Of a DNA stretch of 64,000 nucleotides, positions 8,283 to 39,098 are shown piece by piece (the first letter of the stretch is position 1; each line of letters begins with the position of its first letter). Made by a program: the position numbers and the translations under genes. The DNA is taken from IMG/VR virus record IMGVR_UViG_3300044213_000107, positions 1-64,000 of that record. One strand, 5' to 3'. The notes under the pieces were generated by a model. It searched no databases. It saw only the letters and a list, made by a program, of their open reading frames with translations, and was not told the origin of the DNA.

Positions 8283-8316
8283 AATTAAATGTTGAAGTTG
8301 TGTTGTATTTAGATTG

Positions 8317-9505: not shown

Positions 9506-10017
9506 TATATTATTTTATCCTCACTGTATTTACTCCAATCGGTAAACGCAGATCTATTCATTAAACTATGTAGGCTATAACACCACACACCTGGATTAGT
9601 TGCTTGAAAATCTCGATCATCAAGTTTAAGTGTAGCATTATAACCAAATTTATTAATGTAAGGAAGCTTAACACTAATCATTGGAATAAAGTTATTATAC
9701 TCACATAAGGAACAATTAGTAAGTCCTTCGACTAGTGCAACATCAATATCCAAAGTACATAGATAACCTTTATTTAAAAAATACTTAATAGTTTCTTCCC
9801 ATACTGCCCAATCTGCTGTACCAGGCACCGTTGGAAAACTCATATTTGCACCAAAGAATATATGTTCAACAGGATCACTGCCGCAGGTTAAATGCACTGC
9901 AATATCATCTGTAGTTTGTACACCCACAACAAACATAGTATATTTTCCAAATGCAGGAGTATGTTCTACTTCTGTTCCATAGAAGAATTGTGTATTTTCG
10001 TGTCCTTCTCTATTCAT
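9505..10017 (-). CDS. Conserved-looking hypothetical protein directly downstream of the TGT-like gene
   Basis: F.G.EVEH.P, HIFFGAN, KLDD.DF..TNPGVW. Confidence 0.7.
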   Translation of the reverse strand: MNREGHENTQFFYGTEVEHTPAFGKYTMFVVGVQTTDDIAVHLTCGSDPVEHIFFGANMSFPTVPGTADWAVWEETIKYFLNKGYLCTLDIDVALVEGLTNCSLCEYNNFIPMISVKLPYINKFGYNATLKLDDRDFQATNPGVWCYSLHSLMNRSAFTDWSKYSEDKII

Positions 10018-21265: not shown

Positions 21266-21360
21266 GTGCTCACTTTCGGGATGTTTGGGCACGACTCCTA
21301 CTAATCCCGGGCCAGCAGCCGGCCCACACCTCCGTTACGAATAACGGGTCCTAAGGGTGT
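21266..21360 (-). ncRNA. Structured GC-rich RNA candidate (multi-stem, possible pseudoknot), unassigned
   Basis: ACACC/GGUGU closing CCGUUA-UUCG-UAACGG; GGGCCGG-CUG-CUGGCCC; GGGAU...AUCCC; 3' GUGAGCA can pair with UGCU. Confidence 0.65.
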
Positions 21361-22502
21361 TTTAGTAGCTGATACGCTTCGGGAAATGTATCGGCAAAAT
21401 TCTCTTTACGTAGGGAATCATACCCATCGGTAACACGTTTAAATTCTTGTAATAACTCCGGCGAATTATCGACACCCATCTCAAGCTGTGGAATCAAATG
21501 TTTCACAGCAGTATTGGTTAATTTATTTTTAACAGCTTGTTTCATTGAATCAGGTGCTATACGCATATTTAAGTGCAATGGTCTATGCAGTATATTAAAT
21601 CCACATGTTATTCCACGTTGGTTAAAGTACTGCCATATATCACTGGCATAATATATATTTAACAAACTTACAGTAACACATACACTTAAAACAACATTTG
21701 GATTTTCTGCAGCTAACTGTTGATATTTTGATAAGTTAACTTCAATCTCTGACCATTTTGCAGGATAACGCATATACTCAAATTGTTTGCCAATGCCATC
21801 CATGCTAATACCTATATCAACACTACGAAACTTTTTAAAAATTTCATAGTAATCATCTCTCCATACGGTTCCGTTAGTGTTTATGTGTATATCTACCGTA
21901 TCGGCTAAAGGCAGTTGGCTTGCAGCAGCAAGTAGTGACCAAAGAGGTTCAATTAGCAACGGCTCGGCGCCGTACAGGTCATAATAAACTATATCTTGAG
22001 CCCATTGATTTAATGTAGCCCAGGTTGCACTATCATCGGCAAAACTTTGTTGCGCACCACGAAACTGTTCTAGATAAACGGGATACGATGTTTCATCCGC
22101 TTCCACATGATAGTAATCACGAATCCAACGACTGCTCGTATGAGGGTTACAGTGCCTACAAGCAAGGTTGCACAAATTACCGGGCTTGAGCATAATAACA
22201 CGAGGATGGTCCGTAGGTATAACATTGGCAAACTGTTCATTACTTAATAACCTTTTACTGCGCCTTCCGGCTGCTTCTTCGTCCCAGCAGTCTTGGCAGT
22301 TGTGATGTTGCTGATTTGATTTTAATGCACTGGCAATTTCTTGTCTTGTGGGACTCGCCCATGCGTCTTCTAGCGTATGTTGATCAAGTCGAATAAGTGA
22401 TTGATCGTGATGTTGAAACCAAACACGACTTTGATTACACATTGATGCATAGCCACCATTTTGTGTACTTAGTCCTAGATCGGCTAACACACAATAGGTC
22501 AT
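21351..22502 (-). CDS. Radical SAM protein (Twitch/SPASM-like)
   Basis: CNLACRHC, GAEPL, INTNG, SMDG; start revised to MTYC. Confidence 0.9.
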   Translation of the reverse strand: MTYCVLADLGLSTQNGGYASMCNQSRVWFQHHDQSLIRLDQHTLEDAWASPTRQEIASALKSNQQHHNCQDCWDEEAAGRRSKRLLSNEQFANVIPTDHPRVIMLKPGNLCNLACRHCNPHTSSRWIRDYYHVEADETSYPVYLEQFRGAQQSFADDSATWATLNQWAQDIVYYDLYGAEPLLIEPLWSLLAAASQLPLADTVDIHINTNGTVWRDDYYEIFKKFRSVDIGISMDGIGKQFEYMRYPAKWSEIEVNLSKYQQLAAENPNVVLSVCVTVSLLNIYYASDIWQYFNQRGITCGFNILHRPLHLNMRIAPDSMKQAVKNKLTNTAVKHLIPQLEMGVDNSPELLQEFKRVTDGYDSLRKENFADTFPEAYQLLKHP

Positions 22503-23635
22503 TGAAATTCGGGCCAAAGATCGGCAAATTTTAGTGGACTATCGGGCCAGTATGTGTGTTCTTGTTCTGCATGCCAATCGTATAAGGTTTGAGTTTCTGC
22601 ATCGGGATTGTTGGCCTTAACTAAATTAGCAGCTTGCTCTTTAAAAAATTCTGCGGACTGTGGATTATATTTGATACTTTTAATTAATTCTCGTGCAGAT
22701 TGTTGCATAAATTTGTTAGGCAAACTAAATGCACTCAATCTATGTGGATGTGTTAGTTCTGCCCAACGTATTGGTGGCAGTTGGTTGTCTGCAAAATATT
22801 CATGTATGCTGCTAATATCTAAACAATTATACACACTAAACTGACCAGTTACATTAACACTTTGATGTGGTGCAGCATCTTTTAATGTTTGTATGTTGTG
22901 CAGCATCAACTGCCAGTCTGCCCCATGCCGCACATATTCAAAACGATCTTCTATGGTTTCAAAACTTATATCCCAGGTAACATTGTCAAGCTCGGTTAGT
23001 CTACGAAATATTTTATTTTTTTCTAATGGAACACTAAGATTGGTTATTACATTTATGTGTACTGAATTGTCAATGACATCTAGTAGTAGTTCGTTTTCTT
23101 TTTGTAACAACGGCTCACCACCAAGTAGTCCTAGATTTTTAATTGTGCTGCGATGCTGAACAATATAATCCATTATGCCTTGGATGTCAGCATAGTCTGC
23201 ACGTTCAAGTGGGTGTCCTTTTAATTGAGCCCAAATACTGCTAGCTTCTGACCCACAGTATACACAACTTAAATTACAGGTATTTGACCAACGAATGTCG
23301 AGATTTTGTAGTGGTTGATCTTTTAAACTAACAATAGGTATAGTTCGACGTTCGGCAATATCGTTATACCATGTGCGTTCTGTTACAGGAGTGTGTCGTT
23401 CGCGATCAATGCAAATGCGGCAATTATCATGTTCTTGATTATTAACAATAGCTGTTTTAATTTCATCTAGTAGACTATTGTTAATTGCAGAATCTAAACT
23501 AACTTCTCGCAGATTTCCCAATTCTGTTTGGCCAGCACAACAGGTCTTATAAACACCCAACGGGTTTATATGTATATTTGTCCAAGGAGCATAGCAAAAG
23601 TTTGACCCAATATCCGGGGTTAAATTGATTGTCAT
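22499..23635 (-). CDS. Radical SAM protein (Twitch/SPASM-like)
   Basis: CNLSCVYC, GGEPL; CYAPW..CC..CRIC. Confidence 0.9.
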   Translation of the reverse strand: MTINLTPDIGSNFCYAPWTNIHINPLGVYKTCCAGQTELGNLREVSLDSAINNSLLDEIKTAIVNNQEHDNCRICIDRERHTPVTERTWYNDIAERRTIPIVSLKDQPLQNLDIRWSNTCNLSCVYCGSEASSIWAQLKGHPLERADYADIQGIMDYIVQHRSTIKNLGLLGGEPLLQKENELLLDVIDNSVHINVITNLSVPLEKNKIFRRLTELDNVTWDISFETIEDRFEYVRHGADWQLMLHNIQTLKDAAPHQSVNVTGQFSVYNCLDISSIHEYFADNQLPPIRWAELTHPHRLSAFSLPNKFMQQSARELIKSIKYNPQSAEFFKEQAANLVKANNPDAETQTLYDWHAEQEHTYWPDSPLKFADLWPEFQ

Positions 23636-24361: not shown

Positions 24362-26254
24362 TTACTTTTTTGTGTACTGCTTACGCAATAGTACCTTAAT
24401 AAGATTTTGAACCCTAGGATCAGTAGGTGGCAACATAGTCTTTTCAACGTGCCAATAACCTAGAGTTTTATCTTCCCAGCTGCCAAATTTGACAATTTTG
24501 TTGACTCCTGGGCCAAACTGTGCCTGTGCCATAGCACCCAGAGATTTGACAGAATCTGGTACAAAAGTCATGGTGTAGAATTTATTGACATTTTGACCAT
24601 CAAGTTTAGCTCGAAATTCTTGATTTTGTACTCGAGATACTATGCGAGTTTTGGCCTGAGCATCGCCGGCCTGTATCGAAGAAGCCGTCAACTTGATACC
24701 ATTGTTTTCCAAACCTGCTTTGGCCACTTTGTCAACATCAGATCGACCAGTATACACACTGGCCGTGATCATGGGCGCACCCTTGGTACGCACAAAATCC
24801 AGCACTCGTTCTATGGCAGTGTTTTTTTGTATTTGATCAGTATCAGGGCCTTGCATTAACTTAGCCAACTTGGACTGATACTCTTGACGATAAGCAGCAG
24901 GATCGCTGGCTATGATCATGGCACGCACAAAACGTCCTATCACATTGTACACACCCTGAAAGTCCTGTAGATAGTTGCCACCAGCATGTCTAAAACTAAT
25001 ATACTTGCCGTTGTTGCTGATACTACTGGTATGGCTGCCAGTGGCATTGTTGGCTATGCTCTGCAACATTTTCAAATCTGTATCTTTATTGACTGCGTTC
25101 TTTACCAGGTGTCCCTGCGCACTGCGGGCATAGTCATTGTGCTCGCGACCAAAGTATTTGAGCACATATTGGTCGCCCAGAAATACTGCCAATTTTAACA
25201 AATCCAGTTTCTGCGGAATACTGACATTGATGTGTAGGCCAGTGGTTTTGTTGGTATACAGTCCCTGTTGCTGAGCCAAGGCATAGAAATTCTTGACAGC
25301 ATCTATGGCTTCGGCCACCGGCAAGGGCGGACTCACTATTTCGGCACTGGCATCTTCGTCTTTGTCAGCAGTCAAACTGCCGTCGGGCTCGATGTACCAG
25401 TTTTTTAAATTTTTGTCTTCTTGATGATAGCTGTCAAACACAGTGACCTTGCGTCCCATGACAGACTGTATTATGGGTTTGAGTGCATCGGCCGCTTTTC
25501 TATAGAGTCGGTCATCGTCATCATCGTAGTCATCATCGGCGTAATCTTTGAGATTTAATTCTGCCCATACTGCCGAAGGAGAGTATTGAAAAAATCGGCT
25601 GGTGTGACGGTCTATACCCATGCTAGCACCAGTCAACCATGACAAAAATCCATTCCAGCTTGATGAGTCATCAACGGTACGAACTATCTCTGATCCTACA
25701 GCAAATATTTTTGATTTGTTGTAGTCTGCATACACATATCGACCAAACAGTCTTGCGAATCGCATCTGATCCTGTAGGCTGGTACTGTCAAAGGAAAAAT
25801 CAGGTTTGCTGTCGCGCATCAGCTTTAGAGCTTTTTTGGCACATTTTTCTTTTACATCATCAGGCAGCTTGTTGTAGAGTTCTATGATTTTTGGCAGGTG
25901 GCCCGAATACCAGACTTGATAAGCCTCATTAGCAGTACGGAATCCGCGATAGGGTCTTTTGAATTTGAACAAGGAGTCAAACCATTTGGTAGAAAGTACC
26001 ACACCGTTTTCAAAAGTTGAGCCAACGTTGTTGTCCCAAACATTGGCATAGTACATGGCATCATCTGCTTGCTTGGCAGTGATCGTGGCATCATCTGATG
26101 TTTTTTGAAATACAGCCGGGGGCACATGCACTTCAAATTCAAATCCGATTAATACACCAGCACCCTGCCCTTGCTCAATGGCGTTAGCAAAAGCACTAGG
26201 ATTCATTGGTGCTTCAACAACGCTGCGTGATTCAATGATGTCTTTTATATACAT
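24362..26254 (-). CDS. Putative amidoligase (COOH-NH2 ligase) with capsid-targeting-like N-terminus
   Basis: GFEFE, IEPDGSL, EIVSPP, TGLHINVS, ISFR..GG; N-terminus MYIKDIIES. Confidence 0.8.
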   Translation of the reverse strand: MYIKDIIESRSVVEAPMNPSAFANAIEQGQGAGVLIGFEFEVHVPPAVFQKTSDDATITAKQADDAMYYANVWDNNVGSTFENGVVLSTKWFDSLFKFKRPYRGFRTANEAYQVWYSGHLPKIIELYNKLPDDVKEKCAKKALKLMRDSKPDFSFDSTSLQDQMRFARLFGRYVYADYNKSKIFAVGSEIVRTVDDSSSWNGFLSWLTGASMGIDRHTSRFFQYSPSAVWAELNLKDYADDDYDDDDDRLYRKAADALKPIIQSVMGRKVTVFDSYHQEDKNLKNWYIEPDGSLTADKDEDASAEIVSPPLPVAEAIDAVKNFYALAQQQGLYTNKTTGLHINVSIPQKLDLLKLAVFLGDQYVLKYFGREHNDYARSAQGHLVKNAVNKDTDLKMLQSIANNATGSHTSSISNNGKYISFRHAGGNYLQDFQGVYNVIGRFVRAMIIASDPAAYRQEYQSKLAKLMQGPDTDQIQKNTAIERVLDFVRTKGAPMITASVYTGRSDVDKVAKAGLENNGIKLTASSIQAGDAQAKTRIVSRVQNQEFRAKLDGQNVNKFYTMTFVPDSVKSLGAMAQAQFGPGVNKIVKFGSWEDKTLGYWHVEKTMLPPTDPRVQNLIKVLLRKQYTKK

Positions 26255-26259
26255 ATCAA

Positions 26260-26267
26260 TATTTATC
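26260..26267 (-). promoter_or_regulatory. T4-like late promoter (GATAAATA)
   Basis: 5 bp upstream of the amidoligase ATG. Confidence 0.6.
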
Positions 26268-27795
26268 GTAAACTTAAAGCTTGATCTTGTTGGCTAGCAT
26301 ATGCTTTATGTAGTTTATCAATATAACCCAGGTTTCGTAATATTTTAAATGATAAGTTTTCTACGCCAAACTCGCCATGTTTGTCTAATCCCGATCTGCG
26401 CATTTGTTTTAACTTATATACAATTCGTATAATATCTTCGGGGTCGTTGGCTTGATTTACTGCAACATCTATTTGTTTCATTAGATCACGTGTTTTTGCA
26501 TTTATAGCACGATCATCAATTTGTGGGCGATCAAATTTGGGTTCCTTAATCCACTTTCCGTGTAATAAACTGTAAACACCGGCACTAACAGGAGGATTGT
26601 TAACATCCTCGACATACATTTCTACTTCATGTCCGTATATGGTAATATCATGTTCGGTATTCCAAATACGCTTTTTCGCAGAATAAAATTTTTCTGCTAG
26701 GTCATCACATTTTAAGTCTGCGTATTTGGTTACTACATGTACATCAAAATCACTGTATTTGGTATAGTTGTAGTTAGCCATACTTCCTGTTAATACTACA
26801 TCAATGACACGAAAATCTGGTATGTCTAAACTGTGTGTAAAAAATAGTGCAGTTTTTAATAACTGTAATTGCACCCGTGGATCAATGTCATTATCATGCC
26901 AGACCCGCGGATTTAATGCATCGTGGTAAGCAACATTGTTCTGTACATAACTTTCAGCAACAATAGGTTTATTTTTATAATATTCTGGAAAGCGTCGCCC
27001 AAACTCTCTCATGATAATGCCGGCAACTGCATTAGCTTCATTTTCTTGATCACTGCCAGTTTCGCCGTCACTGTAGTTTAAATTGCCTGTTTGATCCTGG
27101 CGAAAGTGTGTCAACTCATGGCCCATGGTTCTTACAATGTCTAACGGATGACGATTCGCAATACCAAGAACCATTTCACTTTGATCTGCATCATAATAAC
27201 CGAATGTTGGTTGTCCACCTTGTGGCGGTATTTCTCGAACTAGCTTTATTCGAGGTACATGTGTAATACCAATTATCTCTGCGGCCATTGGCAAAAAGTC
27301 CTGCATCATAGCGATAAAATCGTCGTCGCTGGTTTCAAGAAACTCATTGGCAATAGACTGACAAATTTTTCTAATTTTAGGATTAGACGTTTCAACTTCG
27401 GCAAACTGTCGTTGCTCTCCGTGCTGTGTTGGATCCTTATATCCGCAGTAGACTTTTTTAACTGTGCTTTGATTTATTAAATCTGTACAACTTGATTGAT
27501 ATCTATCATCCATGTCTTGATTGCATGGACTTAGTGTTGTGACAATGATACTACCTTCGGGTATATCACCATACTTGTTTTGATAGTTGTCAATTGCTAC
27601 TCTTTCGGCATGCACACGTTGACCATCTGGTCCTGGAGAATTCACACCAACTGCAATACGATGGTCGGGATCTAATACACAGGCTGCAACTAATCCAAAG
27701 TCTTGTTGGCTTTTTTGTCCATTGATGACTGCCTGGCAAAGTTCAATCAATACCGAGTCTAAATGCTGATAGTTACTGACTTCATTGTCTTTCAT
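26263..27795 (-). CDS. Three-domain fusion: Zn-deaminase + HExxH metallopeptidase-like + pol-beta-type nucleotidyltransferase
   Basis: HAE..TLSPC..C; HELTH..E.EANA; LTGS..DFDVH..E.YVE; start revised to MKDNE (ATGA-type coupling). Confidence 0.8.
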   Translation of the reverse strand: MKDNEVSNYQHLDSVLIELCQAVINGQKSQQDFGLVAACVLDPDHRIAVGVNSPGPDGQRVHAERVAIDNYQNKYGDIPEGSIIVTTLSPCNQDMDDRYQSSCTDLINQSTVKKVYCGYKDPTQHGEQRQFAEVETSNPKIRKICQSIANEFLETSDDDFIAMMQDFLPMAAEIIGITHVPRIKLVREIPPQGGQPTFGYYDADQSEMVLGIANRHPLDIVRTMGHELTHFRQDQTGNLNYSDGETGSDQENEANAVAGIIMREFGRRFPEYYKNKPIVAESYVQNNVAYHDALNPRVWHDNDIDPRVQLQLLKTALFFTHSLDIPDFRVIDVVLTGSMANYNYTKYSDFDVHVVTKYADLKCDDLAEKFYSAKKRIWNTEHDITIYGHEVEMYVEDVNNPPVSAGVYSLLHGKWIKEPKFDRPQIDDRAINAKTRDLMKQIDVAVNQANDPEDIIRIVYKLKQMRRSGLDKHGEFGVENLSFKILRNLGYIDKLHKAYASQQDQALSLR

Positions 27796-28226
27796 CTTAG
27801 GCTTGACTTTAACATCCACCCGTGTTTTTCATGTGCATCCATGCGTTCAGCAAGGAAGTTACTAAATCCATGTTTGCCTTCGGCTTCGGCTAAATCATAG
27901 ACTATTTTAAACATACCAATGGCTTTTTGATTGTCTTCAATAAGTTGATGTACCATGGCCATCTGTGGCGGTATTTCTGTTTCATCTTCGATTTGTGTTA
28001 GTACACTAAATCTAGTGTAGCTGGCCGGCACAAATGCTCCTAGACTGCGAATCTTTTCTGCAAAGTCGTCAATCGCATCATAAACTTCTTCGTAGATTTT
28101 ACCAAAAAGACCGTGATACTCATAGAAGTCAGCACCAGTTACATTCCAGTGATAGTTGTGTGCTTTTAGATAAAAGCTGAATTCTGTGGCAAATGCTATT
28201 TTTGCTGCTTTTTGTAGTTCATCCAT
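27792..28226 (-). CDS. dps: Dps/ferritin-like DNA-protection protein
   Basis: HNYHWNVTG..F...H, D..AEKIR.LG, HEKHGWML. Confidence 0.92.
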   Translation of the reverse strand: MDELQKAAKIAFATEFSFYLKAHNYHWNVTGADFYEYHGLFGKIYEEVYDAIDDFAEKIRSLGAFVPASYTRFSVLTQIEDETEIPPQMAMVHQLIEDNQKAIGMFKIVYDLAEAEGKHGFSNFLAERMDAHEKHGWMLKSSLR

Positions 28227-28228
28227 TG

Positions 28229-31207
28229 TTATACCTCATATCCTGCTTGACGCATTTCTAACAACATACTATCAAGTAAGGAATCATAATCTTCTTTAAT
28301 GTGTCCACCTACAGGACTGGTGCTGTCTACTGCCACCGGCATGTTGCTGTCTTCTGTTTGTCGAGCAGGTCTGCAATCAAGTATAGTAGCATTATGTCGT
28401 TCTGCCCAATCACGTGCGGCAGATTCACTGCTAAACACTCGTGTTGCTAATACACGTTGATCTCTACGATTATACACATAATAACGACATTCTACTGCGG
28501 TGTTTTCGGCCAAATGCCATGCCGCTTGGTCCGCATCATGATCTGGTCTTACTGCTTTATTTTTTTGTACTTCGGCAGCACCTAGTCCTAGTTTGGCTCG
28601 ACGCTTTTTTTCTGCCATTTGTGTTTCGTAGTCTTTTATGCCGTGATAAACTTCACCGTGTGGTGGTTGCAAAGGACGATCCTTTGACACTAGATTTTTA
28701 ACATCAGAGTAGTTTATTTTTGGTTTCTTTTTAGGACTTTGAAATCCGAAGATACTTTCTTGTTCAATGTCTTCGTGCCATTGATTGTTGCTGCCGGCCC
28801 AAGCATCTCCTTGATCGCTATGCCATTGGTTGTCAGCGCCTGTCCATGCATCTTCGTCTACACTTTGCTCACGAATAAAATCGTCATCGCCGTAGTGTAA
28901 TTCCCAAGGCTCAATAAAATCATCGTCATCACGTTGTCTTGGTGCTATACCAGTGCCATGACATACTCTGCAACTGGTATTATCAGTAAGTCCTTCGCCA
29001 GTGCCACGACATGTATAACACTCGTTATCAGCATCTTCTGGGCCTTCGGACACTTTTGCTACTGGTGGTTTTTGCTTGGCTATCTCTAATTCATTTGTTG
29101 TAACAACTTTAAATTGTGCGCCGCCACCGCGTGCCAATAGTGTTTTAATTTTATCTGCGGAACCATAGTTATCACCGGCAACTACAACAGTTCCATCGGG
29201 TTGGATTTGTTTTATAACTCTAGTAACAAAAGCATGATCTGTATTAGGATACTGTTTTTGCACTGCCGCTAGTCCACGTTGCAATGCTTGTGAGGCTTGT
29301 TGCATTTGTGGAGTTTGCTGACTATCTTCCGCCACACCTTGCTTACCTCCATGGACGGCATTTAATAATAATTGGTATAGTGCTTTTTTAGCAAGATCAA
29401 ATGATGGGAATACTTGTTTGTTTTTTGTACTTCTGTTTACGTAAATTTTGTATACATTACCTTGTTTTACTAAACGATATTCGTTTCCATTTATTGTTTT
29501 AAGGAATAATAACTTAATATGTGCGGATGGATCATCTGATATTGTAAACTCACCTTCCGCCAATTGTTTACCGGTCAAAGTTATAGTTTTATCCGGATTC
29601 ATTCTAATAATTCTGTCGTTTAATAAACTTGTATAAACATGACGTTGTGCAGGTGTAATACCATTTCTATCTATCTTAAAAGGCAGATTATGATTTTCTG
29701 CTGTTTCAATGGCCTTTATTAATAATATTTTACCATGTCCCAACCCTCTGACGTCGGAATGTATCATGGCATCATTCTCTACATCATTTGTTTCAGGGAA
29801 ATATTGATAGGCAAAAAATCCTGCTTCTCTACCGTCTACGGCCAGTTCAACTTCAAATGATGTTTCGTAGTTATCTCTTGAGAATATGTTAAAAGATGGT
29901 TGTGATTGTTCTGAGCCTTCCGCCACACCTTCTTTGTATGTAACAGGATCAGTTTGTTTTAAAAATTCGTCAGGATCAAAATCTTTTACACTATAGGATT
30001 CGATATAGTCTTTATAATTTGATAATTTTTTAATTATCTCGGGGGAATTGTTAATCCACATAGCACGAGGAACATCTAATACAGTATATTGTCCTTCTGA
30101 CATTAATTTTATATTGTTATAATGTTCAGGAATCCCTGGCATAAATGTAGTAAAATATTTTAATAAACTCATTAGTGATGTATAATTTTTATACAAAGGA
30201 TCTGTTTTGGAAGTAGTAGACATTGACACCGCGGTTGCAATAGCAGGCATTATTGGACCATTTGGGGCAATAACCTCATCGATTAATTGCTGACGCAAAT
30301 TCTCTTTAATTTTTGCATCTTCAGAATTAGTAGTATTTTGATTACTAGTATTATTTTTTGACGGGTTCACTGTAGATTTTTGTGATGCCGGTTCCGTAGG
30401 ATTGATATTATTTTGCCATGAACTTCTAGTATTTTTTTGTTGAAAATTATCTTTTGATTGAACATATTTTTTAATGTAATCGTATACGGCCTCTGCTCCA
30501 GAAAATGCTGCAGTCGCTATTCCTATACTTGCTAAATCGATACCTACTTTCTTTAAAAAATTTCTACGATTGTTATTAGGTGACTGGTTGGGTTGTGCTT
30601 TAGGCGGCTCTTGCGAAGCACGCTCTGCATTCACTGCGTCCAATATTTCTTTTTCGGTAATGTTGTACTTACGCATCAATGCCGATAATTGTCTTTTCAA
30701 TAAATCTGTTTCGTGCTGAGGTTTATTATGACTATTTTGTATTTCTTTATATAATTGAATACAACTATTTAACGCCCCATCTCTTGTACCAGCCTCCGCT
30801 ACACCTTGTAAACTCTTGCGAATAGCAGCAGAAGTTTTATCAATCTGCTTACCAGTGGCCCGCATTACATTGCCCATACGGTCTGTGGCTTGGCGGTGCT
30901 TGCCAGCAGCAGCAAGTTCGTCTGCAGACTTTCGAGCCTTTTGTTTATAACTAGACAATGTGTCTGAACTTAGTTCGTCAACTATTTCATCTTGGCTTTC
31001 ATCTGCAGGTCTTGTATAAACTTGTTGTACATTTTTTGGATCTTTATCAAGGATTACATTCGGCAATGGTGCATTTTTATCTTTTGCAAAATGCTGGCGC
31101 ATGTCTGCAACGCTAGGTGTTGGTTTAGGTGCAGGTTTTTTAGCAGGCTGAAAATGAAAAATTCCTTCTACAGATTTTTCTTTTTCAAATAAATCGCTGA
31201 TAAACAT
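28229..31207 (-). CDS. 992-aa modular polyprotein, putative internal head protein (includes a GNAT module, DnaJ-type Zn finger, Tat-like segment)
   Basis: MFISDLFE N-terminus; modules joined by QGVAEA/EGVAEG/QLAEG/QGVAED/KVSEG; RGLGHGK acetyl-CoA motif; CYTCRGTG/CRVCHGTG. Confidence 0.7.
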   Translation of the reverse strand: MFISDLFEKEKSVEGIFHFQPAKKPAPKPTPSVADMRQHFAKDKNAPLPNVILDKDPKNVQQVYTRPADESQDEIVDELSSDTLSSYKQKARKSADELAAAGKHRQATDRMGNVMRATGKQIDKTSAAIRKSLQGVAEAGTRDGALNSCIQLYKEIQNSHNKPQHETDLLKRQLSALMRKYNITEKEILDAVNAERASQEPPKAQPNQSPNNNRRNFLKKVGIDLASIGIATAAFSGAEAVYDYIKKYVQSKDNFQQKNTRSSWQNNINPTEPASQKSTVNPSKNNTSNQNTTNSEDAKIKENLRQQLIDEVIAPNGPIMPAIATAVSMSTTSKTDPLYKNYTSLMSLLKYFTTFMPGIPEHYNNIKLMSEGQYTVLDVPRAMWINNSPEIIKKLSNYKDYIESYSVKDFDPDEFLKQTDPVTYKEGVAEGSEQSQPSFNIFSRDNYETSFEVELAVDGREAGFFAYQYFPETNDVENDAMIHSDVRGLGHGKILLIKAIETAENHNLPFKIDRNGITPAQRHVYTSLLNDRIIRMNPDKTITLTGKQLAEGEFTISDDPSAHIKLLFLKTINGNEYRLVKQGNVYKIYVNRSTKNKQVFPSFDLAKKALYQLLLNAVHGGKQGVAEDSQQTPQMQQASQALQRGLAAVQKQYPNTDHAFVTRVIKQIQPDGTVVVAGDNYGSADKIKTLLARGGGAQFKVVTTNELEIAKQKPPVAKVSEGPEDADNECYTCRGTGEGLTDNTSCRVCHGTGIAPRQRDDDDFIEPWELHYGDDDFIREQSVDEDAWTGADNQWHSDQGDAWAGSNNQWHEDIEQESIFGFQSPKKKPKINYSDVKNLVSKDRPLQPPHGEVYHGIKDYETQMAEKKRRAKLGLGAAEVQKNKAVRPDHDADQAAWHLAENTAVECRYYVYNRRDQRVLATRVFSSESAARDWAERHNATILDCRPARQTEDSNMPVAVDSTSPVGGHIKEDYDSLLDSMLLEMRQAGYEV
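29326..29340 (-). repeat. GVAE repeat copy 1 (AAGGTGTGGCGGAAG)
   Basis: Exact 15-bp match to copies 2, 4 and 5. Confidence 0.9.
29913..29932 (-). repeat. GVAE repeat copy 2 (GAAGGTGTGGCGGAAGGCTC)
   Basis: 20 bp identical to 32790-32809. Confidence 0.9.
30792..30808 (-). repeat. GVAE repeat copy 3, degenerate (CAAGGTGTAGCGGAGGC)
   Basis: Near match encoding QGVAEA. Confidence 0.75.
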
Positions 31208-32631
31208 TATTTCATTGCTCCTGCAGATTTAACCAAGTTTGCTAATTGTTGTCCTTGGGGACCTTGTAAAATTTTACCTAGTGCTGGCGCCATTTTACTT
31301 ATAGCAGCTTGATCAGCGGTGCTCATAGGTGCACCTGTTTCGGCTTTTTGTAATGCTGGTCCAGTTTTAGCTGGATCTACATCAACACCGGCAGTTTTTA
31401 GAACGCCAAGATTCTTTTGTTGTAATGCTTGTTGTTGTTGTAGTTTTGCAGCATCTTGAGGTTTGTTTGCACCACCAGCGGTTGTTTGTGCCATGGTTGT
31501 TTGTGCAGTGGGTGTGAGATCTTCTGCCATATCCTCATCCATGCTGCCTTTTAATAACCCTGCTTTTTCCATAGCTGCCGACGATTCGGGCCCTAACTTT
31601 TGTACACCACTAGCAACACCTTTAGCATTGATGGCAATATATGGAGCAGGTGTCCTTACCATTCCGTTGTTAGACACAATGTATGTGTTGTTTTGTGTAT
31701 CCAATACCGCTTTAACTGTTTGTCCAGCAAAAGGTACAGTAGTTAAAGTAAATCCATTGCCTAGATCTTGTTGTGCATGTGCACCTAGCGCACCCAATGC
31801 CATGGCCCCGCCAACAACTGCATCTTTCCAGCCTTCCGCCACACCTTCATTAGGCACACAGTTGTTTACACGCACACCACCTTTGATCTTTGTACCTTCT
31901 TTGTGCTTACCAGTCCAGCACTTGGGATCTAGGCGTGTTTTAATTTCGTTTACAGCTGCACCTGTGGGTACAGCACTTTCGCAATTCCACTTGCGTAGTG
32001 CTTTATTGATACGGCTATTTGGATCTCTCTTGGTCTTGGCTCCAGTACGATGTTTCTTCATACCTTTCATACGAGCACAAAAACTCTTACGACGCTTTGA
32101 GGCCTTTGAGCCTTTCTTTAACTTGCTGGGTTTGGTTGTGACTGCAGTTTGTAGTTTGCTACCAGGATGACTACGACGATAACTTGCTACACCTTTTTTA
32201 TTCAAGCCGCCATTTTTATTCTTACCTGATGACTTTTGCCAGGCTTCTGCTTCGGCTAATAATTCTTCATCATCACAGTCATCGAAATCTTCCCAGATTA
32301 GATCTGCGTCAACACCATTTTGTTCAGCAATTGACTCAATCATTTCTTCAATAATGTCAAACTGCGAATTTAACAATTGTTCTTCTACTAGTAGATCCGC
32401 CTGAAACTGTTGCCAAGCTTCACTGATTTCCCGATGAACATTTCGTTCTTTGCTGGTACGATCAAGTTCTGGTAGTACACTTTCGGCGGCACCAACAAGG
32501 CGACCTTTGAACGGATGTTGCTTACCACCAGTCTTGGCTTTTTCAGTTCCACGCACTTGATCGCCGGGTTTTTGTCCTACCGCTTGTCCGGCGAACTTAT
32601 CCATTGATTCTAATAGTTTACGCATGTCCAT
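31207..32631 (-). CDS. Modular polyprotein, putative internal head protein (basic AW..GKN..GGLN module, CW.G...NCV module, signal-peptide-like module)
   Basis: MDMRKLLES start; junctions LLAE, VNE, EGVAEG, MDEDMAED. Confidence 0.7.
   Translation of the reverse strand: MDMRKLLESMDKFAGQAVGQKPGDQVRGTEKAKTGGKQHPFKGRLVGAAESVLPELDRTSKERNVHREISEAWQQFQADLLVEEQLLNSQFDIIEEMIESIAEQNGVDADLIWEDFDDCDDEELLAEAEAWQKSSGKNKNGGLNKKGVASYRRSHPGSKLQTAVTTKPSKLKKGSKASKRRKSFCARMKGMKKHRTGAKTKRDPNSRINKALRKWNCESAVPTGAAVNEIKTRLDPKCWTGKHKEGTKIKGGVRVNNCVPNEGVAEGWKDAVVGGAMALGALGAHAQQDLGNGFTLTTVPFAGQTVKAVLDTQNNTYIVSNNGMVRTPAPYIAINAKGVASGVQKLGPESSAAMEKAGLLKGSMDEDMAEDLTPTAQTTMAQTTAGGANKPQDAAKLQQQQALQQKNLGVLKTAGVDVDPAKTGPALQKAETGAPMSTADQAAISKMAPALGKILQGPQGQQLANLVKSAGAMK
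31831..31848 (-). repeat. GVAE repeat copy 4 (GAAGGTGTGGCGGAAGGC)
   Basis: 18-bp exact match to copies 2 and 5. Confidence 0.9.
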
Positions 32632-32632
32632 A

Positions 32633-33130
32633 TTAATATACACCTTTTCCTACTTGCACCACCTGAGGTCTACGAATAACATTGCTGATCTTTTTTGGTT
32701 TTCCAGTTGGTGGTTTTCCACCTAATTCACCGACCACCGCACCAATGCTGGCTGCACCAGTTGCACCACCAGTTGCATCTTCTTTTAAGGAGCCTTCCGC
32801 CACACCTTCCTCTAACACAGCCGTTAATTGTTGTTGAGCTGACTCCATAGCAAACTCGGGCATGCCTTCGGCTTCTTGGCTTAATTGATCATACTCTAAA
32901 TATTCACGCACAGTTTTTAAATAGTCTGCAGCAATGCTGATCTTTTCACTGACCCATCCATCGAGCCCGTCTAGTTCTGATACTCGTTTTAATAGTTTGT
33001 GCAATTCAATTGCATCTTTTGCAGCGTGATAACATTCTTCACGAGCCATTTGTACTTCGTGGTCTTTGTGCATAGCATGTGCATCATCGCCGATAAATTC
33101 ATTTTCTACGATAAAATCTGTGGTTTTCAT
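32633..33130 (-). CDS. Putative internal head protein
   Basis: MKTTDFIVE closely resembles the T4 capsid-targeting sequence MKTYQEFIAE; contains EEGVAEG. Confidence 0.7.
   Translation of the reverse strand: MKTTDFIVENEFIGDDAHAMHKDHEVQMAREECYHAAKDAIELHKLLKRVSELDGLDGWVSEKISIAADYLKTVREYLEYDQLSQEAEGMPEFAMESAQQQLTAVLEEGVAEGSLKEDATGGATGAASIGAVVGELGGKPPTGKPKKISNVIRRPQVVQVGKGVY
32790..32809 (-). repeat. GVAE repeat copy 5 (GAAGGTGTGGCGGAAGGCTC)
   Basis: 20 bp identical to 29913-29932. Confidence 0.9.
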
Positions 33131-33152
33131 GGTAATTATCCTGGGTATAGTG

Positions 33153-33159
33153 TATTTAG
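33153..33159 (-). promoter_or_regulatory. Late promoter (CTAAATA) for the internal-protein block
   Basis: TAAATA consensus. Confidence 0.55.
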
Positions 33160-33426
33160 TTAGCCGATATTGAACACAGTATCTGAACTTTGACCGTTAA
33201 CCTGTACATTTCTTACACTAAATGTGCCGTTAGCATCGAGTGCTTCTAGTCTTACTGCATGTGTTCCGGGGTCAAGATTACAAATAACTGTTTCTTGCAG
33301 ATATATTTCTGCTGGCGGAAATCTAAAAGTTCTTTCGGTGATTAAATCACGATCAACATAAATCCTGTATGCCGGAGCAGCATCTGCGTAATCACAATAG
33401 ATATCTGCAGAGATCTTAACTTCCAT
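33160..33426 (-). CDS. Hypothetical beta-rich protein
   Basis: ORF track; weak similarity to 34524-34994 (P.Y/F.I.V, L..G...L). Confidence 0.65.
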   Translation of the reverse strand: MEVKISADIYCDYADAAPAYRIYVDRDLITERTFRFPPAEIYLQETVICNLDPGTHAVRLEALDANGTFSVRNVQVNGQSSDTVFNIG

Positions 33427-34492
33427 GTTGTGCTCGCAGTTGTTTTAGTTGATGTTGCAACTTACCTAATGTTTCTACTAAACGAAATGCACGAGCATTT
33501 TTCATTGGTGTATCTGGGTGCACATCCCGGGTTAGGCTCATGCTATAACGTGGGTCTCGCGCCATTTTAGCATTGCTGGCGACAACACCAACTCCGGCTG
33601 CTTCATTAACTGACAAATCTTTTATTAACTTTGATAATTGTTTTATCTGTTGCGCAACACGTTCTAGTTTTTCTTCGGTGCTGTGTTCTTCTTGTTCAAC
33701 ATGATCAACATCACGTTCTTCTTTGTCCAACACATACATCGCTAGTGCTTGATCGTCGGTTTTTGCTATTGGATACATAACACGTGCACGTCTGACTAAA
33801 AGATCAACTTTGGTGTTAGAATGCTCGTGGCTTTCGGCAACTGCTTTAGGTATTTTATCTAGAATTAACCCAATTTCTGGATCTGCACGACCATACAATT
33901 GTTTAATGTATTCTAATCTTGCAGTAGGATCATCCCGTACCATGTTCCAGAGATTCCTGCAGTCTGTACCATGGCTAGCATCGTATGTTTTGCCACCGAT
34001 TACTAAACTGGCCTTTACTTCAGGAACAATAATAACATAGCCATGTTGGTCAGCAGTAGTGGCTTCTTTGATGTTTTTCCAGGTTTTGAAGTAAGTTTCG
34101 TCACCGGCACGTATGCTTTTTGCAGGATTGTCTCGTTTATAAACAGCATCGGGTTGGAGTCTATCTGCATCTGGCGCCCCAACTGCAGTGATAAAAATAG
34201 TATTGGTTTTATCTATGCTGTCTGGTAATGCGTACACATTACTGGTTTCTACAACACGATCCTGCGGAACGCCGGCGGCAGTCATTAGTTGTATTTTATC
34301 GCTAAAATTAAAAGGACTTTTAGCGCCATCAGTTTTGTTGCTGGTTAAAATATACACCGCATCACGGCCAAATTTAGCCTGCAGTTGTTGAAAAACCGCA
34401 GCATGTCCACGGTGAAAAGGTTGAAAGCGGCCAGGATAAGTTACTACTATTCTGGGACCGCTTTCTTTTATAAACATTTCAGCAATAAACAT
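33416..34492 (-). CDS. Cytidylyltransferase-like (HxGH) protein with capsid-targeting-like N-terminus
   Basis: YPGRFQPFHRGH, SPFNFSDK; MFIAEMFIKE N-terminus; VAE/VNE junctions in C-terminal part. Confidence 0.8.
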   Translation of the reverse strand: MFIAEMFIKESGPRIVVTYPGRFQPFHRGHAAVFQQLQAKFGRDAVYILTSNKTDGAKSPFNFSDKIQLMTAAGVPQDRVVETSNVYALPDSIDKTNTIFITAVGAPDADRLQPDAVYKRDNPAKSIRAGDETYFKTWKNIKEATTADQHGYVIIVPEVKASLVIGGKTYDASHGTDCRNLWNMVRDDPTARLEYIKQLYGRADPEIGLILDKIPKAVAESHEHSNTKVDLLVRRARVMYPIAKTDDQALAMYVLDKEERDVDHVEQEEHSTEEKLERVAQQIKQLSKLIKDLSVNEAAGVGVVASNAKMARDPRYSMSLTRDVHPDTPMKNARAFRLVETLGKLQHQLKQLRAQHGS

Positions 34493-34523
34493 AAAAAATC
34501 TCGCCTATTGCTGTATTTAGCAG

Positions 34524-34994
34524 TTACATATTTTCCAGTAACCAGATGTAAAATGGACTTTCAAACGCAATCTTATATGCGCCATTCCACCCTAGATTAA
34601 CACATTCACGCATTGTTGTAATAGTTTTGCCGTTGTTGACTACTGGTGTATCTAATACATATTCACTGGCTTTGTGTCGTAAGTTACCAATATCAATATC
34701 GTCAATTATAATGCTTTCTATGTTTAGTAACATATCTTGCAAAATAGTCCATGTGCCATCTGCATCTGTTTCTGTTACAGTATCGCCATCGGCTTTGTTT
34801 AGCAAAACAACAGCAAGCACCGCAGGACCTTCAGGTAAATCAACAGAAAATTCATGTGTTTCTACTGATCCCGACTCGCCCGATATAGTAGTCCTTACAT
34901 ATTCAGTGTCATTTACCCGAATAGCAAATTCTGGTCGTTTTGACCAGTATGTGCCCGAAACGCCAATTTTAAAATTTAATGCTTCTGTGGTCAT
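34524..34994 (-). CDS. Hypothetical protein
   Basis: ORF track; ATGA coupling. Confidence 0.7.
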   Translation of the reverse strand: MTTEALNFKIGVSGTYWSKRPEFAIRVNDTEYVRTTISGESGSVETHEFSVDLPEGPAVLAVVLLNKADGDTVTETDADGTWTILQDMLLNIESIIIDDIDIGNLRHKASEYVLDTPVVNNGKTITTMRECVNLGWNGAYKIAFESPFYIWLLENM

Positions 34995-36114: not shown

Positions 36115-36831
36115 TTATTCAGGCCTATGCACCAGTTCATGAATTTTTCTCACAAACCCGGGACTAATAATAGACAAAAAAGTAGCTATCTTTTCATCGT
36201 TGGCATAAAAAAATGCGCCATAAAGATAATTAAAAATTTGAAATTGGCGTATGGTGCCTGCACTTAGTTTAACATCATCTTGTGAATTTAAATAGTTAAA
36301 AATCGATGATCTTACATCATCGGGATAATATCCATCTCTGATCATGAATTTAAATTTATACTCAGGTTTTTGTTTTCTAATAATTTTGTCGCTACTGAGT
36401 ATTTCTAAATCTTCGTTGTCTTTGGGCCATGTTACACTTTGGATTTTTGACTGTAGAGATTCGTTCATGGCAACAGCAACCTCTCGCAATACCTCTTGGT
36501 CTTCGGTATAAATCTGCACATAAGGATCTTCAATACGAATTTTTATTTTTGATCCAAACGAATCTTTAATGTCTCGAAGATTTTGTAGATCTGCAGAGGA
36601 AAATAAGTCAACATTTCTACGTGGACGCCAACTACCACCAAAATTATAATGCCGAATATTAAAAATCATAGCATCTAACTCGGCGGATATATTGCCAGTC
36701 CTAGCATCTGTTACTACACGACTGCCGTGCACTACTAGTTCCATGCGACAATAAAAACGATTGTAGTATCGTTTTTTTGTAAATAGGTAGTTAATGTTTT
36801 TATTGATCTTGCGCCAAAACGATGAAGCCAT
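36115..36831 (-). CDS. Hypothetical protein (start uncertain)
   Basis: ORF track. Confidence 0.6.
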   Translation of the reverse strand: MASSFWRKINKNINYLFTKKRYYNRFYCRMELVVHGSRVVTDARTGNISAELDAMIFNIRHYNFGGSWRPRRNVDLFSSADLQNLRDIKDSFGSKIKIRIEDPYVQIYTEDQEVLREVAVAMNESLQSKIQSVTWPKDNEDLEILSSDKIIRKQKPEYKFKFMIRDGYYPDDVRSSIFNYLNSQDDVKLSAGTIRQFQIFNYLYGAFFYANDEKIATFLSIISPGFVRKIHELVHRPE

Positions 36832-39088: not shown

Positions 39089-39098
39089 TATAAAATAT

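What the first reader, a model, noticed from the sequence alone, without database searches (positions are those of the whole stretch)
24362..34492. 10-kb late block of enzymes carrying T4-like capsid-targeting N-termini
Seen: N-termini MKTTDFIVE, MFIAEMFIKE, MFISDLFE, MYIKDIIES and MDMRKLLES; TAAATA late promoters at 26260, 33153 and 34514; many L/V/I-x-E junctions. Known: T4 internal proteins use MKTYQEFIAE as a cleavable capsid-targeting sequence and are ejected with the DNA. Payloads in the block include an amidoligase, a deaminase/peptidase/nucleotidyltransferase fusion, a GNAT, an HxGH nucleotidyltransferase and Dps (the fusion and Dps lack a clear targeting motif). Inference: a packaged toolkit for immediate host takeover or anti-defence.
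Basis: partly seen in the sequence, partly recalled or inferred. Interest (0 to 1): 0.75.

Follow-up and report, generated by a model that had tools for sequence, protein, structure and literature searches.

The report
Capsid-targeted effector polyproteins with shuffling linkers
A giant T4-related freshwater phage carries a late-gene block of enzymes whose short T4-like leaders and repeated "GVAEG" junctions suggest they are loaded into the capsid, cut apart and injected with the DNA; the junctions are also exact breakpoints where modules are swapped between phages.

Summary
The window is the first 64 kb of a 260.7-kb viral contig from a freshwater metagenome. It belongs to the RaK2/GAP32/PA5oct-like giant T4-related myophages and encodes a T4-type prohead protease and a gp23 capsid protein. 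The nine block genes, their N-termini, the domain calls and the three TAAATA sites are as described.

A strict CTS-like N-terminal motif occurs in 14 of 333 ORFs against 1.3 expected. This repeats in a 354-kb relative (10 against 1.4). In syntenic orthologues the leaders persist while the payload domains are split, fused and swapped.

New here: leader proteins carry an internal junction, [KE][QE]GVAEG. It is encoded by an almost invariant 15-nt word, GGTGTGGCGGAAGGC, that uses rare codons. The word occurs in at least 120 viral contigs. It marks the exact points where homology breaks between module combinations.

The same modules are preceded either by an N-terminal leader or by an internal hydrophobic-x-Glu site. 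The best reading is late-made, capsid-targeted, protease-processed effector polyproteins with a built-in recombination junction.

Packaging, cleavage and expression timing are inferred, not shown. A Zn-peptidase conserved in the block is a rival cutter. Generic L/V/I-x-E sites are not enriched.

The parts
34514..34520 (-). Late-promoter-like CTAAATA, 28 nt upstream of the 358-aa gene
   Evidence: same motif and spacing before tail sheath and tail tube genes
33416..34492 (-). 358-aa protein. Leader MFIAEMFIKE|S, then an HxGH nucleotidyltransferase nearest to archaeal NadM-type NMNAT. A VAE|S site at residues 218-221 lies at the end of the domain.
   Evidence: orthologue leaders are MLIFEMFEPQ (L003), MYSFELFEAG (L004) and MYITELSEPQ (G001)
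33160..33426 (-). 88-aa protein with no leader and no known family; conserved in G001 and L003
33153..33159 (-). Late-promoter-like CTAAATA, 29 nt upstream of the 165-aa gene. It heads a run of five abutting or overlapping genes: 165 aa, 474 aa, 992 aa, Dps and 518 aa.
   Evidence: the motif and its spacing are conserved upstream of MKTTDFI genes in five other contigs
32633..33130 (-). 165-aa protein. Leader MKTTDFIVE|N, then a helical 'DHEVQMAR...GLDGWV' module, then EGVAEG at residues 108-113, then a Gly-rich basic tail.
   Evidence: the same module follows GVAEG internally in L130 and L137
32792..32806 (-). Exact 15-nt linker word GGTGTGGCGGAAGGC (GVAEG) in the 165-aa gene
   Evidence: contigs from other lakes lose similarity at 32791 and 32808
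31207..32631 (-). 474-aa protein. N-terminus MDMRKLLES, then LLAE|AE, then the basic DUF6321 module (about residues 126-219), a CW...NNCVP knuckle, GVAEG (263-267) and a C-terminal part.
31831..31845 (-). Exact 15-nt linker word (GVAEG) in the 474-aa gene
28229..31207 (-). 992-aa polyprotein. Leader MFISDLFE, then junctions GVAEA (135), GVAEG (427) and GVAED (624). It has a weak GNAT-like segment (444-508) and a CxxCxGxG zinc-ribbon module (about 727-757).
30791..30805 (-). Linker variant GGTGTAGCGGAGGCT (GVAEA)
   Evidence: a joint at 30795
29915..29929 (-). Exact 15-nt linker word (GVAEG)
   Evidence: loose ends at 29913 and 29933
29324..29338 (-). Linker variant GGTGTGGCGGAAGAT (GVAED)
   Evidence: loose ends at 29326 and 29343-29345
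27792..28226 (-). Dps/ferritin-like protein with no leader. It keeps this position in G001, L003 and L004.
26263..27819 (-). 518-aa fusion (510 aa from the ATG at 27795) with no clear leader: cytidine/dCMP-deaminase-like, HExxH..E minimal Zn-metallopeptidase, IVAE|S junction, Pol-beta NTase (phrog_36119).
   Evidence: In G001 the peptidase is a separate 127-aa gene with the leader MRASDFLIEG. In L004 it is fused with the NTase, deaminase and DUF6321.
26260..26266 (-). Late-promoter-like ATAAATA, 12 nt upstream of the 630-aa gene; it overlaps the stop codon of the 518-aa gene
24362..26254 (-). 630-aa Amidoligase_2 protein with N-terminus MYIKDIIES. There is a paralogue at G000 95233-97449 (MRYTDIKPLSE) and an orthologue in G001 (MKITEF...).
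34524..34994 (-). 156-aa protein upstream of the block, with no leader and a weak CBM-like hit. It is syntenic in G001 and L003.

Best explanation
The block encodes late-expressed cargo for the capsid interior of a giant T4-related phage.

Proposed mechanism:
1. Each cargo chain starts with an 8-10-residue leader resembling the T4 capsid-targeting sequence. The pattern is M-[KR/F]-x-x-[DE]-hydrophobic-hydrophobic-x-E. Examples are MKTTDFIVE and MFIAEMFIKE, against MKTYQEFIAE in T4.
2. The leader directs the chain into the scaffolding core.
3. The T4-type prohead protease cuts after the glutamate.
4. Larger chains are polyproteins. Their modules include a NadM-like nucleotidyltransferase, deaminase, Zn-peptidase, Pol-beta NTase, a GNAT-like segment, amidoligase, the basic DUF6321 module and helical modules. 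The modules are separated by hydrophobic-A-E-[G/S/D] junctions, most often [KE][QE]GVAEG, and are released by cleavage at those junctions.
5. The pieces leave the capsid with the DNA and act before any phage gene is expressed.
6. The GVAEG junction is also a fixed 15-nt DNA word. It serves as an in-frame recombination point, so modules are exchanged between chains and between phages without breaking the reading frame or the cleavage site.

Shown here: the leaders, the junctions, the protease gene, the promoter motif, nucleotide-level conservation of the junction, and the breakpoints.

Inferred: targeting, cleavage, packaging, ejection, and what each enzyme does in the host.
For: 1. The machinery is present. 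Peptidase_S77 (E 1.7e-25) and Gp23 (E 1.9e-99) are in the same contig. The capsid protein's own N-terminus, MTTALLE|N, carries four hydrophobic-hydrophobic-E sites ahead of the conserved core.

2. The leader is enriched: 14 against 1.3 in G000 and 10 against 1.4 in G001.

3. The leader is conserved as peptide. MKTTDFI in six contigs uses varied synonymous codons, and one such protein (locus L035) is otherwise only 30% identical. Published T4 work gives MKTYQEFIAE as sufficient for packaging foreign proteins (PMC8442874; PMC9026906).

4. In the NTase the leader lies outside the fold. NMNAT structures align from query residue 20 to chain residue 9.

5. GVAEG occurs 5 times and GVAE[AD] twice in G000, all in leader proteins. 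About 1.5 GVAE are expected in the whole proteome. The eighth GVAE, in the DnaJ-like protein, lies in its N-terminal J-domain-like region.

6. Leader and internal site are interchangeable before the same module.
   - DUF6321: LLAE|AEAWQKSSGKNKNGG in the window, against MKFEEIVTE|TAAWQKKSGKNKNGG in G001.
   - The 165-aa module: MKTTDFIVE|NEFIGDDAHAMH in the window, against GVAEG|FNGEYDDEAGMAH.

7. Junctions lie at domain ends. In the peptidase model the residues running into the VAE|S site drop below pLDDT 50. VAE|S also ends the NTase homology.

8. The junction is conserved as DNA. The 15-mer or its GGT variant encodes 52 of 62 distinct GVAEG contexts. Val is GTG in 59 of 62, against 14% genome usage. 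Ala is GCG in 57 of 62, against 7%. The flanks are unconserved.

9. Among the 102 word occurrences in 80 of the at least 120 IMG/VR loci, 89 are in frame in open frames of at least 150 aa.

10. A two-by-two recombinant set, A|X, A|Y, B|X and C|Y, has homology that ends exactly at the word. Contigs from four other lakes diverge at the window's linkers.

11. The block is syntenic in G001, L003 and L004 with domain fission and fusion. NTase, deaminase, DUF6321 and peptidase form one 739-aa chain in L004.

12. The late-type promoter motif is shared with the tail sheath and tail tube genes.

13. PA5oct gp150 (MKINDIITEG, 73 aa, between portal and protease) is flagged as detected in virions by mass spectrometry.
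Against: - There is no direct evidence of packaging, cleavage or timing. No RNA run was listed and there is no isolate or virion proteome.
- PA5oct shares the head genes but has no GVAEG and no leader enrichment, so its 93-protein virion list does not transfer.
- T4 gp21 needs little beyond hydrophobic-x-E. That does not explain why G-V-A-E-G is so fixed, and the fixed peptide could be a by-product of the fixed DNA word.
- Dps, the 518-aa fusion, and the 88- and 156-aa proteins have no leader.
- MDMRKLLES-type N-termini have Q instead of E in one relative (L168).
- The strict leader pattern marks only 14 of 78 GVAEG proteins in the related loci (odds ratio 2.3, p=0.013). Most of the rest look leader-like only by eye.
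- One 343-kb relative with four linkers shows no protease, MCP or portal. This is most simply a contig that lacks the head module, but that is not proven.
Confidence: 0.58

Rival explanations
1. The chains are polyvalent effector proteins whose GVAEG junctions are cut by the block's own small Zn-metallopeptidase rather than by the prohead protease. Cutting could happen before packaging or after delivery. The N-terminal leaders may still target the capsid.
For: - An HExxH..E module with invariant catalytic residues is conserved in the block in the window, G001 and L004. It occurs in 25 of about 200 linker or DUF6321 loci and is absent from PA5oct, which also lacks GVAEG.
- The module folds confidently as a minimal metallopeptidase. 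Best matches are abylysin, selecase, CapP, IrrE and Wss1.
- A five-residue fixed site suits a dedicated site-specific protease better than gp21.
- Self-processing by metallopeptidase domains was proposed for polyvalent proteins (PMC5512222).
Against: - Fold matches are weak (best E 6.5e-3, TM about 0.5-0.6).
- The junction shares the hydrophobic-x-Glu logic of the leaders and of capsid-protein sites.
- The same module can be preceded by a leader or by a junction, which argues for one cutter.
- Many linker-bearing loci show no peptidase, although most are short fragments.
Confidence: 0.2
2. The GVAEG word is only a recombination junction, or another DNA- or RNA-level element, read through as a harmless linker. 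The proteins are ordinary late cytoplasmic enzymes, for example for DNA or nucleotide modification, that are neither packaged nor cut.
For: - Conservation is at nucleotide level, with rare codons and unconserved flanks.
- Breakpoints coincide with the word.
- Radical-SAM and glycosyltransferase-like genes flank the block.
- Dps and the deaminase fusion lack leaders.
Against: - The word is essentially always in one reading frame (89 of 102).
- Decayed variants keep V/I-x-E-[G/E/D], for example SVEEG, DIAEG, SVAED and IVAES, at the same module boundaries.
- The junction is confined to proteins with CTS-like leaders in G000.
- Leaders are under peptide-level selection.
Confidence: 0.15
3. The shared N-termini are chance, common descent of paralogues, or another signal such as a degron for the adjacent phage ClpA-like ATPase.
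For: - The loose hydrophobic-hydrophobic-(x)-E pattern is common by chance, at about 4% of N-termini.
- ClpA- and DnaJ-like genes lie next to the block.
Against: - The strict motif is tenfold above chance in two genomes.
- Beyond residue 12 the leader proteins are unrelated, apart from the two amidoligases and one weak pair.
- The motif closely matches the experimentally defined T4 CTS.
Confidence: 0.05

Closest known systems
T4 internal proteins (IPI, IPII, IPIII) and Alt, with the capsid-targeting sequence and gp21 processing
   Same: - A short N-terminal leader ending hydrophobic-x-Glu: MKTTDFIVE here, MKTYQEFIAE in T4.
- A T4-type S77 prohead protease in the genome.
- Diverse, fast-changing payloads behind a conserved leader.
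- A late-promoter motif of the TATAAATA type.
   Different: - The payloads are enzymes and multi-module polyproteins of up to 992 aa rather than small basic proteins.
- There are many internal junctions.
- The junction is fixed at DNA level.
- The host phage is a RaK2/PA5oct-like giant phage far from the T-evens.
- Nothing has been shown experimentally.
Polyvalent proteins of phages and conjugative elements (Iyer, Burroughs, Anand, de Souza and Aravind 2017, PMC5512222)
   Same: - Several effector domains in one chain, including a metallopeptidase, a Pol-beta NTase and a GNAT.
- Predicted packaging and co-delivery with the DNA.
- Predicted proteolytic release.
- Rampant domain shuffling.
   Different: - Here there is a defined N-terminal T4-like leader.
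- A defined junction peptide sits between modules.
- A fixed DNA word encodes that junction.
- Amidoligase_2 and DUF6321 do not appear in that paper's text as searched.
Inner-body and ejection proteins of phiKZ, 201phi2-1 and SPN3US, cut by gp21-related proteases at S/A/G-x-E
   Same: - A giant phage in which many head-internal proteins are cut after Glu at short motifs.
- Multiple sites per chain (PMC9026906).
   Different: - The P3 residue is hydrophobic, as in T4, not small.
- The phiKZ-like systems have no recognised 10-residue N-terminal CTS.
- They have no conserved DNA junction word.
Junction motifs of polymorphic toxins (VENN in CdiA, PxxxxDPxGL in Rhs)
   Same: From general knowledge, not tested here: a short conserved motif marks the border of swappable modules and is thought to serve both processing and recombination.
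   Different: - These are bacterial secreted toxins, not phage capsid cargo.
- They have one junction per protein rather than up to seven.
- The sequences are unrelated.

Membership tests
T4-type CTS / internal-protein system | Phage encodes a T4-type (S77, gp21) prohead protease and a gp23-type capsid protein | tested here: met
   PF03420 at E 1.7e-25 (G000 259479-260117) and PF07068 at E 1.9e-99. Six of the ten largest linker-bearing contigs also have S77. The other four show no capsid-protein or protease gene at all; one of them (G010) ends inside its portal gene.
T4-type CTS / internal-protein system | An N-terminal leader of about 10 residues, hydrophobic at the targeting positions, ending hydrophobic-x-Glu | tested here: met
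   Three block proteins and 14 genome ORFs fit a strict pattern against 1.3 expected. The T4 sequence and the roles of its positions come from PMC8442874 and PMC9026906. Two of the five cited N-termini fit only a loose pattern.
T4-type CTS / internal-protein system | Leader conserved while the mature parts are unrelated or variable | tested here: met
   Leader proteins are unrelated beyond residue 12. Orthologues keep the leaders while domains are split and fused. MKTTDFI is kept on a protein only 30% identical.
T4-type CTS / internal-protein system | Late expression | tested here: inconclusive
   The [AC]TAAATA motif lies at -28, -29 and -12, as it does before the tail sheath and tail tube genes. 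No RNA run was listed. A gp55-like late sigma factor was not searched for.
T4-type CTS / internal-protein system | Protein present in virions with the leader removed | not testable with these tools
   The phage is uncultured. The PA5oct virion list does not cover this system, and its supplementary tables are not held.
Polyvalent proteins (Iyer et al. 2017) | Two or more unrelated effector domains in one chain, encoded by a phage with a portal-terminase packaging system, often including a metallopeptidase | tested here: met
   The 518-aa chain combines deaminase, Zn-peptidase and Pol-beta NTase. The L004 739-aa chain combines NTase, deaminase, DUF6321 and peptidase.
Polyvalent proteins (Iyer et al. 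2017) | Delivered into the recipient cell with the DNA | not testable with these tools
   Inference only.
NadM-type NMN adenylyltransferase (the 358-aa protein) | Score above the equivalog cut-off, with the GRFQPxHxGH motif | tested here: not met
   The motif is present (PGRFQPFHRGH), but TIGR01527 scores 34 bits against a cut-off of 181 and PDB NMNATs match at E 1e-3. It has the same fold class; the substrate is unknown.

The most novel reading that the evidence does not exclude
A fixed 15-21-nt word encoding [KE][QE]GVAEG works as a dual-purpose cassette border in freshwater giant T4-related phages. At the protein level it is the site where capsid-loaded polyproteins are cut into separate effectors. 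At the DNA level it is the in-frame crossover point that lets effector modules be exchanged between chains and between phages. This would be a phage counterpart of polymorphic-toxin cassette exchange. It may be maintained by gene conversion or by a dedicated enzyme.
Probability: 0.4. Interest if true: 0.85.

Novelty: new variant of a known kind. Interest (0 to 1): 0.72.

Why it matters
- It would extend the T4 capsid-targeting principle to a distant, environmentally abundant clade of giant phages. So far the principle is known from T4, with CTS-like leaders noted in close relatives such as T2 and T6 (PMC9026906).
- It would show that whole enzyme sets can be carried as pre-made cargo, not only small inhibitor proteins.
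- The GVAEG word gives a simple sequence handle for finding such cargo in metagenomes. At least 120 contigs turned up in one scan.
- It offers a concrete, testable case of a motif selected at both peptide and nucleotide level to keep an effector arsenal modular.
- It may also provide new leaders and cleavable linkers for loading foreign proteins into phage capsids.

Tried and rejected
- **Searches of cultured phages.** Megablast of the block found nothing. tblastn of the 992-aa protein found nothing. The 630-aa and 358-aa proteins found only distant partial hits. Cultured relatives therefore cannot annotate the block.
- **PA5oct virion proteome as a cross-check.** I fetched the whole genome. 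PA5oct has no GVAEG and only four strict-pattern leaders, of which only gp150 is convincing; no expectation was computed. None of the nine block proteins has a PA5oct homologue; only the flanking ClpA-, DnaJ-like and a 239-aa protein match. Its supplementary tables are not held.
- **Broader leader pattern.** A looser hydrophobic-hydrophobic-(x)-E pattern is only about twofold enriched in G000 and not enriched in G001 or PA5oct, so I dropped it as evidence.
- **Generic [LIV]xE enrichment.** Not significant.
- **RNA evidence for timing.** No run was listed.
- **AlphaFold model of the DUF6321 module.** Mean pLDDT was 58.7, too low to use, so I ran no fold search on it.
- **G007.** The 343-kb contig with four linkers but no S77, Gp23 or portal first looked like a counter-example. 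It shares the ClpA/DnaJ synteny. Contigs of this clade repeatedly end at the head module. I therefore read it as a missing module, not a different head type.
- **Joints in the read layout.** The 'joints' skipping 881-3760 nt have sides of only 20-39 nt, which is the linker word itself. I did not count them as deletions. Only the loose ends were used.
- **Protease-leader complex prediction.** Not run. A negative result would be uninformative, and the T4 CTS is thought to bind the scaffold core rather than the protease.
- **Literature.** There were no phage-related hits for GVAEG and no hits at all for DUF6321. There were no papers on such polyproteins in T4-like giant phages.

Full report
**What the window is.**
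The 64-kb window is the start of a 260,723-bp linear viral contig, rated about 74% complete. It comes from a freshwater metagenome. The contig encodes a gp23-type major capsid protein. That protein is 69% identical to the one in Vibrio phage 2.275.O and 68% identical to the one in Pseudomonas phage PA5oct. RaK2-, GAP32- and CBB-like giant myophages follow. A T4-type prohead protease (Peptidase_S77) sits two genes upstream of the capsid gene. Nearly all genes are on the minus strand.

**Check of the observation.**
The nine genes and the five quoted N-termini are in place.
- Amidoligase_2 in the 630-aa protein.
- A cytidine/dCMP-deaminase-like domain and a Pol-beta NTase in the 518-aa protein.
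- Ferritin/Dps.
- A weak GNAT hit and a CxxCxGxG zinc ribbon in the 992-aa protein.
- DUF6321 in the 474-aa protein.
- An HxGH nucleotidyltransferase in the 358-aa protein. It is nearest to archaeal NMN adenylyltransferases but far below the family cut-offs.

The peptidase part of the 518-aa protein has invariant H-E-x-x-H and a downstream Glu. It folds at pLDDT 88.9 and best matches minimal zinc metallopeptidases.

The three TAAATA sites are at the stated coordinates. ATAAATA and TAAATAC are the most over-represented upstream 7-mers of the genome, 43 and 42 observed against about 3 expected. The motif precedes the tail sheath, tail tube and a virion structural protein at the same distance as in the block. 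A T4-like late promoter is therefore a fair reading, although no transcript data could be found.

**Are the N-termini more than chance?**
A strict pattern, M-x(2-5)-[DE]-hydrophobic-hydrophobic-x(1-2)-E, hits 14 of 333 ORFs. Shuffled N-termini give 1.3, and internal Met positions match at 0.35%. Three of the hits are in the block. The others form further clusters:
- 90-97 kb: MRATEFLLES, MRIKEIILES and an amidoligase paralogue.
- 146-153 kb: MRARDFIVED, MRAREFLIEG and MKVNEVLTEQ.
- Single genes: MKITEIITET and MLLAEIISES.

Beyond residue 12 these proteins are unrelated, apart from the two amidoligases and one weak pair (992-aa and 544-aa, 30% over 113 aa).

A related 354-kb genome, G001, is 98% complete and has S77 and a T4 portal. 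It repeats the result, 10 against 1.4.

A looser pattern is barely above chance. MYIKDIIES and MDMRKLLES therefore rest only on conservation in orthologues.

MKTTDFI is kept in six contigs with ordinary synonymous variation. In one of them it heads a protein that is otherwise only 30% identical. Selection is therefore on the peptide.

The T4 capsid-targeting sequence MKTYQEFIAE is sufficient to load foreign proteins. It is removed by gp21 after the final Glu (PMC8442874; PMC9026906; PMC3012670).

GVAE followed by G, D or A occurs seven times in the G000 proteome. All seven are in leader proteins: the 992-aa protein three times, the 474-aa and 165-aa proteins once each, and a 544-aa protein at 91 kb twice. 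One further GVAE lies in the N-terminal J-domain-like region of the DnaJ-like protein.

In related viral contigs the motif recurs up to seven times per chain. More generally, [LIVMF]-A-E-[GSDA] is seven-fold enriched in leader proteins, whereas generic [LIV]-x-E is not.

These sites sit at domain ends:
- IVAE|S lies between the peptidase and the NTase. The peptidase model loses confidence in its last three residues, which run into this site.
- VAE|S lies where NTase homology stops.
- LLAE|A lies before DUF6321.

The same module can be preceded by a leader or by an internal site:
- DUF6321 follows LLAE|AE in the window, but follows the N-terminal MKFEEIVTE|T in G001.
- The helical module of the 165-aa protein follows MKTTDFIVE|N in the window, but follows GVAEG elsewhere.

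This equivalence is the main reason to treat both as cleavage borders.

**Nucleotide-level conservation and shuffling.**
All five GVAEG sites of G000 are encoded by the same word, GGTGTGGCGGAAGGC. I then examined 62 distinct GVAEG contexts in loci that had been gathered by protein similarity, so their selection did not depend on the word.
- 52 use this word or its GGT-ending variant.
- Val is GTG in 59 of 62, against 14% genome usage.
- Ala is GCG in 57 of 62, against 7%.

The preceding codon is almost always CAA or GAA. The flanks of 66 non-redundant contexts carry no information.

Among the 102 word occurrences in 80 of those loci, 89 lie in frame in open frames of at least 150 aa.

Four contigs form a clean recombinant square. 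L130 is A|X, L184 is A|Y, L137 is B|X and L139 is C|Y. Shared sides are about 85-97% identical, the other sides show no similarity, and the switch falls exactly at the word.

When contigs from four other freshwater metagenomes are laid on the window, their similarity ends at both edges of the linkers at 29324-29338, 29915-29929 and 32792-32806, and at one edge of the linker at 31831-31845.

The block itself is syntenic in G001, L003 and L004, but its domains are distributed differently over genes. In L004 one 739-aa chain holds NTase, deaminase, DUF6321 and peptidase. In G001 the peptidase is a separate 127-aa gene with the leader MRASDFLIEG.

**Mechanism and its rivals.**
The most economical reading has four parts:
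1. The genes are transcribed late.
2. The leader takes the chain into the scaffold core.
3. The prohead protease removes the leader and cuts the junctions.
4. The freed modules travel with the DNA.

The DNA word keeps exchanges in frame and preserves the cut site. I put this at about 0.58.

The main rival (0.2) is that the block's own Zn-peptidase cuts GVAEG. The peptidase occurs in 25 of about 200 related loci and is absent from PA5oct, which also lacks GVAEG. A five-residue fixed site also suits a dedicated protease.

A second rival (0.15) is that the word is only a recombination or nucleic-acid element and the proteins are cytoplasmic late enzymes. Three findings count against it. The frame is constant. 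Decayed variants keep V/I-x-E-[G/E/D]. The junction is restricted to leader proteins.

Chance, paralogy or a ClpA degron are unlikely (0.05).

**What the cargo might do.**
This part is inference from domain content only. A NadM-like adenylyltransferase, a deaminase, a Pol-beta NTase, a GNAT-like module, two amidoligases and a peptidase match the repertoire proposed for injected polyvalent proteins that blunt host defences (PMC5512222).

DUF6321 is strongly basic and up to about 95% identical across contigs. It is found only in viruses. In T4-like cyanophages it sits between gp15 and the terminase genes. A DNA-associated internal protein is a reasonable guess, but its model was too poor to test this.

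Dps and the 518-aa fusion lack leaders. They may be carried along by other means or may act in the cell.

**Limits.**
- PA5oct has virion mass spectrometry flags in its record. It shows that giant phages of this group pack many proteins, including enzymes. Its gp150, a 73-aa protein starting MKINDIITEG, is virion-associated. Otherwise PA5oct lacks this system.
- A 343-kb relative with four linkers shows no head genes at all. Contigs of this clade often end at the head module, which is the likely reason.
- No literature on the GVAEG junction or on DUF6321 was found.

**Verdict.**
This is a new variant of the T4 CTS and polyvalent-protein theme. The added and, as far as I could find, undescribed feature is the junction conserved at nucleotide level.

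Noticed in passing
window 26260-26266, 39089-39102 region, 52803-52813, 55814-55826; about 25 genes across G000: The [AC]TAAATA motif sits at exactly -11 or -12 from the ATG of many genes. A second class sits at -24 to -31. A T4-type late start about 6-7 nt downstream would make the first class leaderless or nearly leaderless mRNAs.
   Followed up: no
window 21351-23635; G001, many places: Two radical-SAM-like paralogues lie just downstream of the block. G001 holds 12 paralogues of this family.
   Followed up: no
window 36800-39950: ClpA-like (762 aa) and DnaJ-like (283 aa) genes lie directly upstream of the block. This is syntenic in PA5oct (EST35_0297 and 0298), G001, G007, L003 and L004. 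In PA5oct the genes after ClpA (0299-0306, except 0301) are large proteins detected in virions by mass spectrometry.
   Followed up: partly
L240 1955-2770 (P-SSM2 gp114); L241 1481-2764 (P-TIM68): DUF6321 is widespread in T4-like cyanophages (285 phage records). There it lies between the tail sheath stabiliser gp15 and the terminase genes, without a CTS-like leader or GVAEG. It also occurs in Pelagibacter podophages.
   Followed up: partly
G000 257146-260640; G010 166565-167578; G007 whole contig: Contigs of this clade tend to end in or next to the head-gene module. G007 is rated 99% complete yet has no portal, protease or capsid gene. This may reflect long terminal repeats or strain variation there.
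   Followed up: partly
G000 90038-97449 and 145802-153089: Two further clusters of leader-bearing genes lie outside the window. They include a second amidoligase and a 544-aa polyprotein with two GVAEG words. Most have no recognisable family.
   Followed up: partly
window 8001-10000 and 52001-54000: There is a GC dip to 0.32 at 8-10 kb. A short plus-strand island at 52-54 kb has reversed AT and GC skew.
   Followed up: no
L092 32921-33142 (PA5oct EST35_0150): A 73-aa protein starting MKINDIITEG lies between the portal and protease genes and is flagged as detected by ESI-MS/MS. It is in the position of T4 core proteins gp67 and gp68. It is the only convincing CTS-like N-terminus found in PA5oct.
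   Followed up: partly
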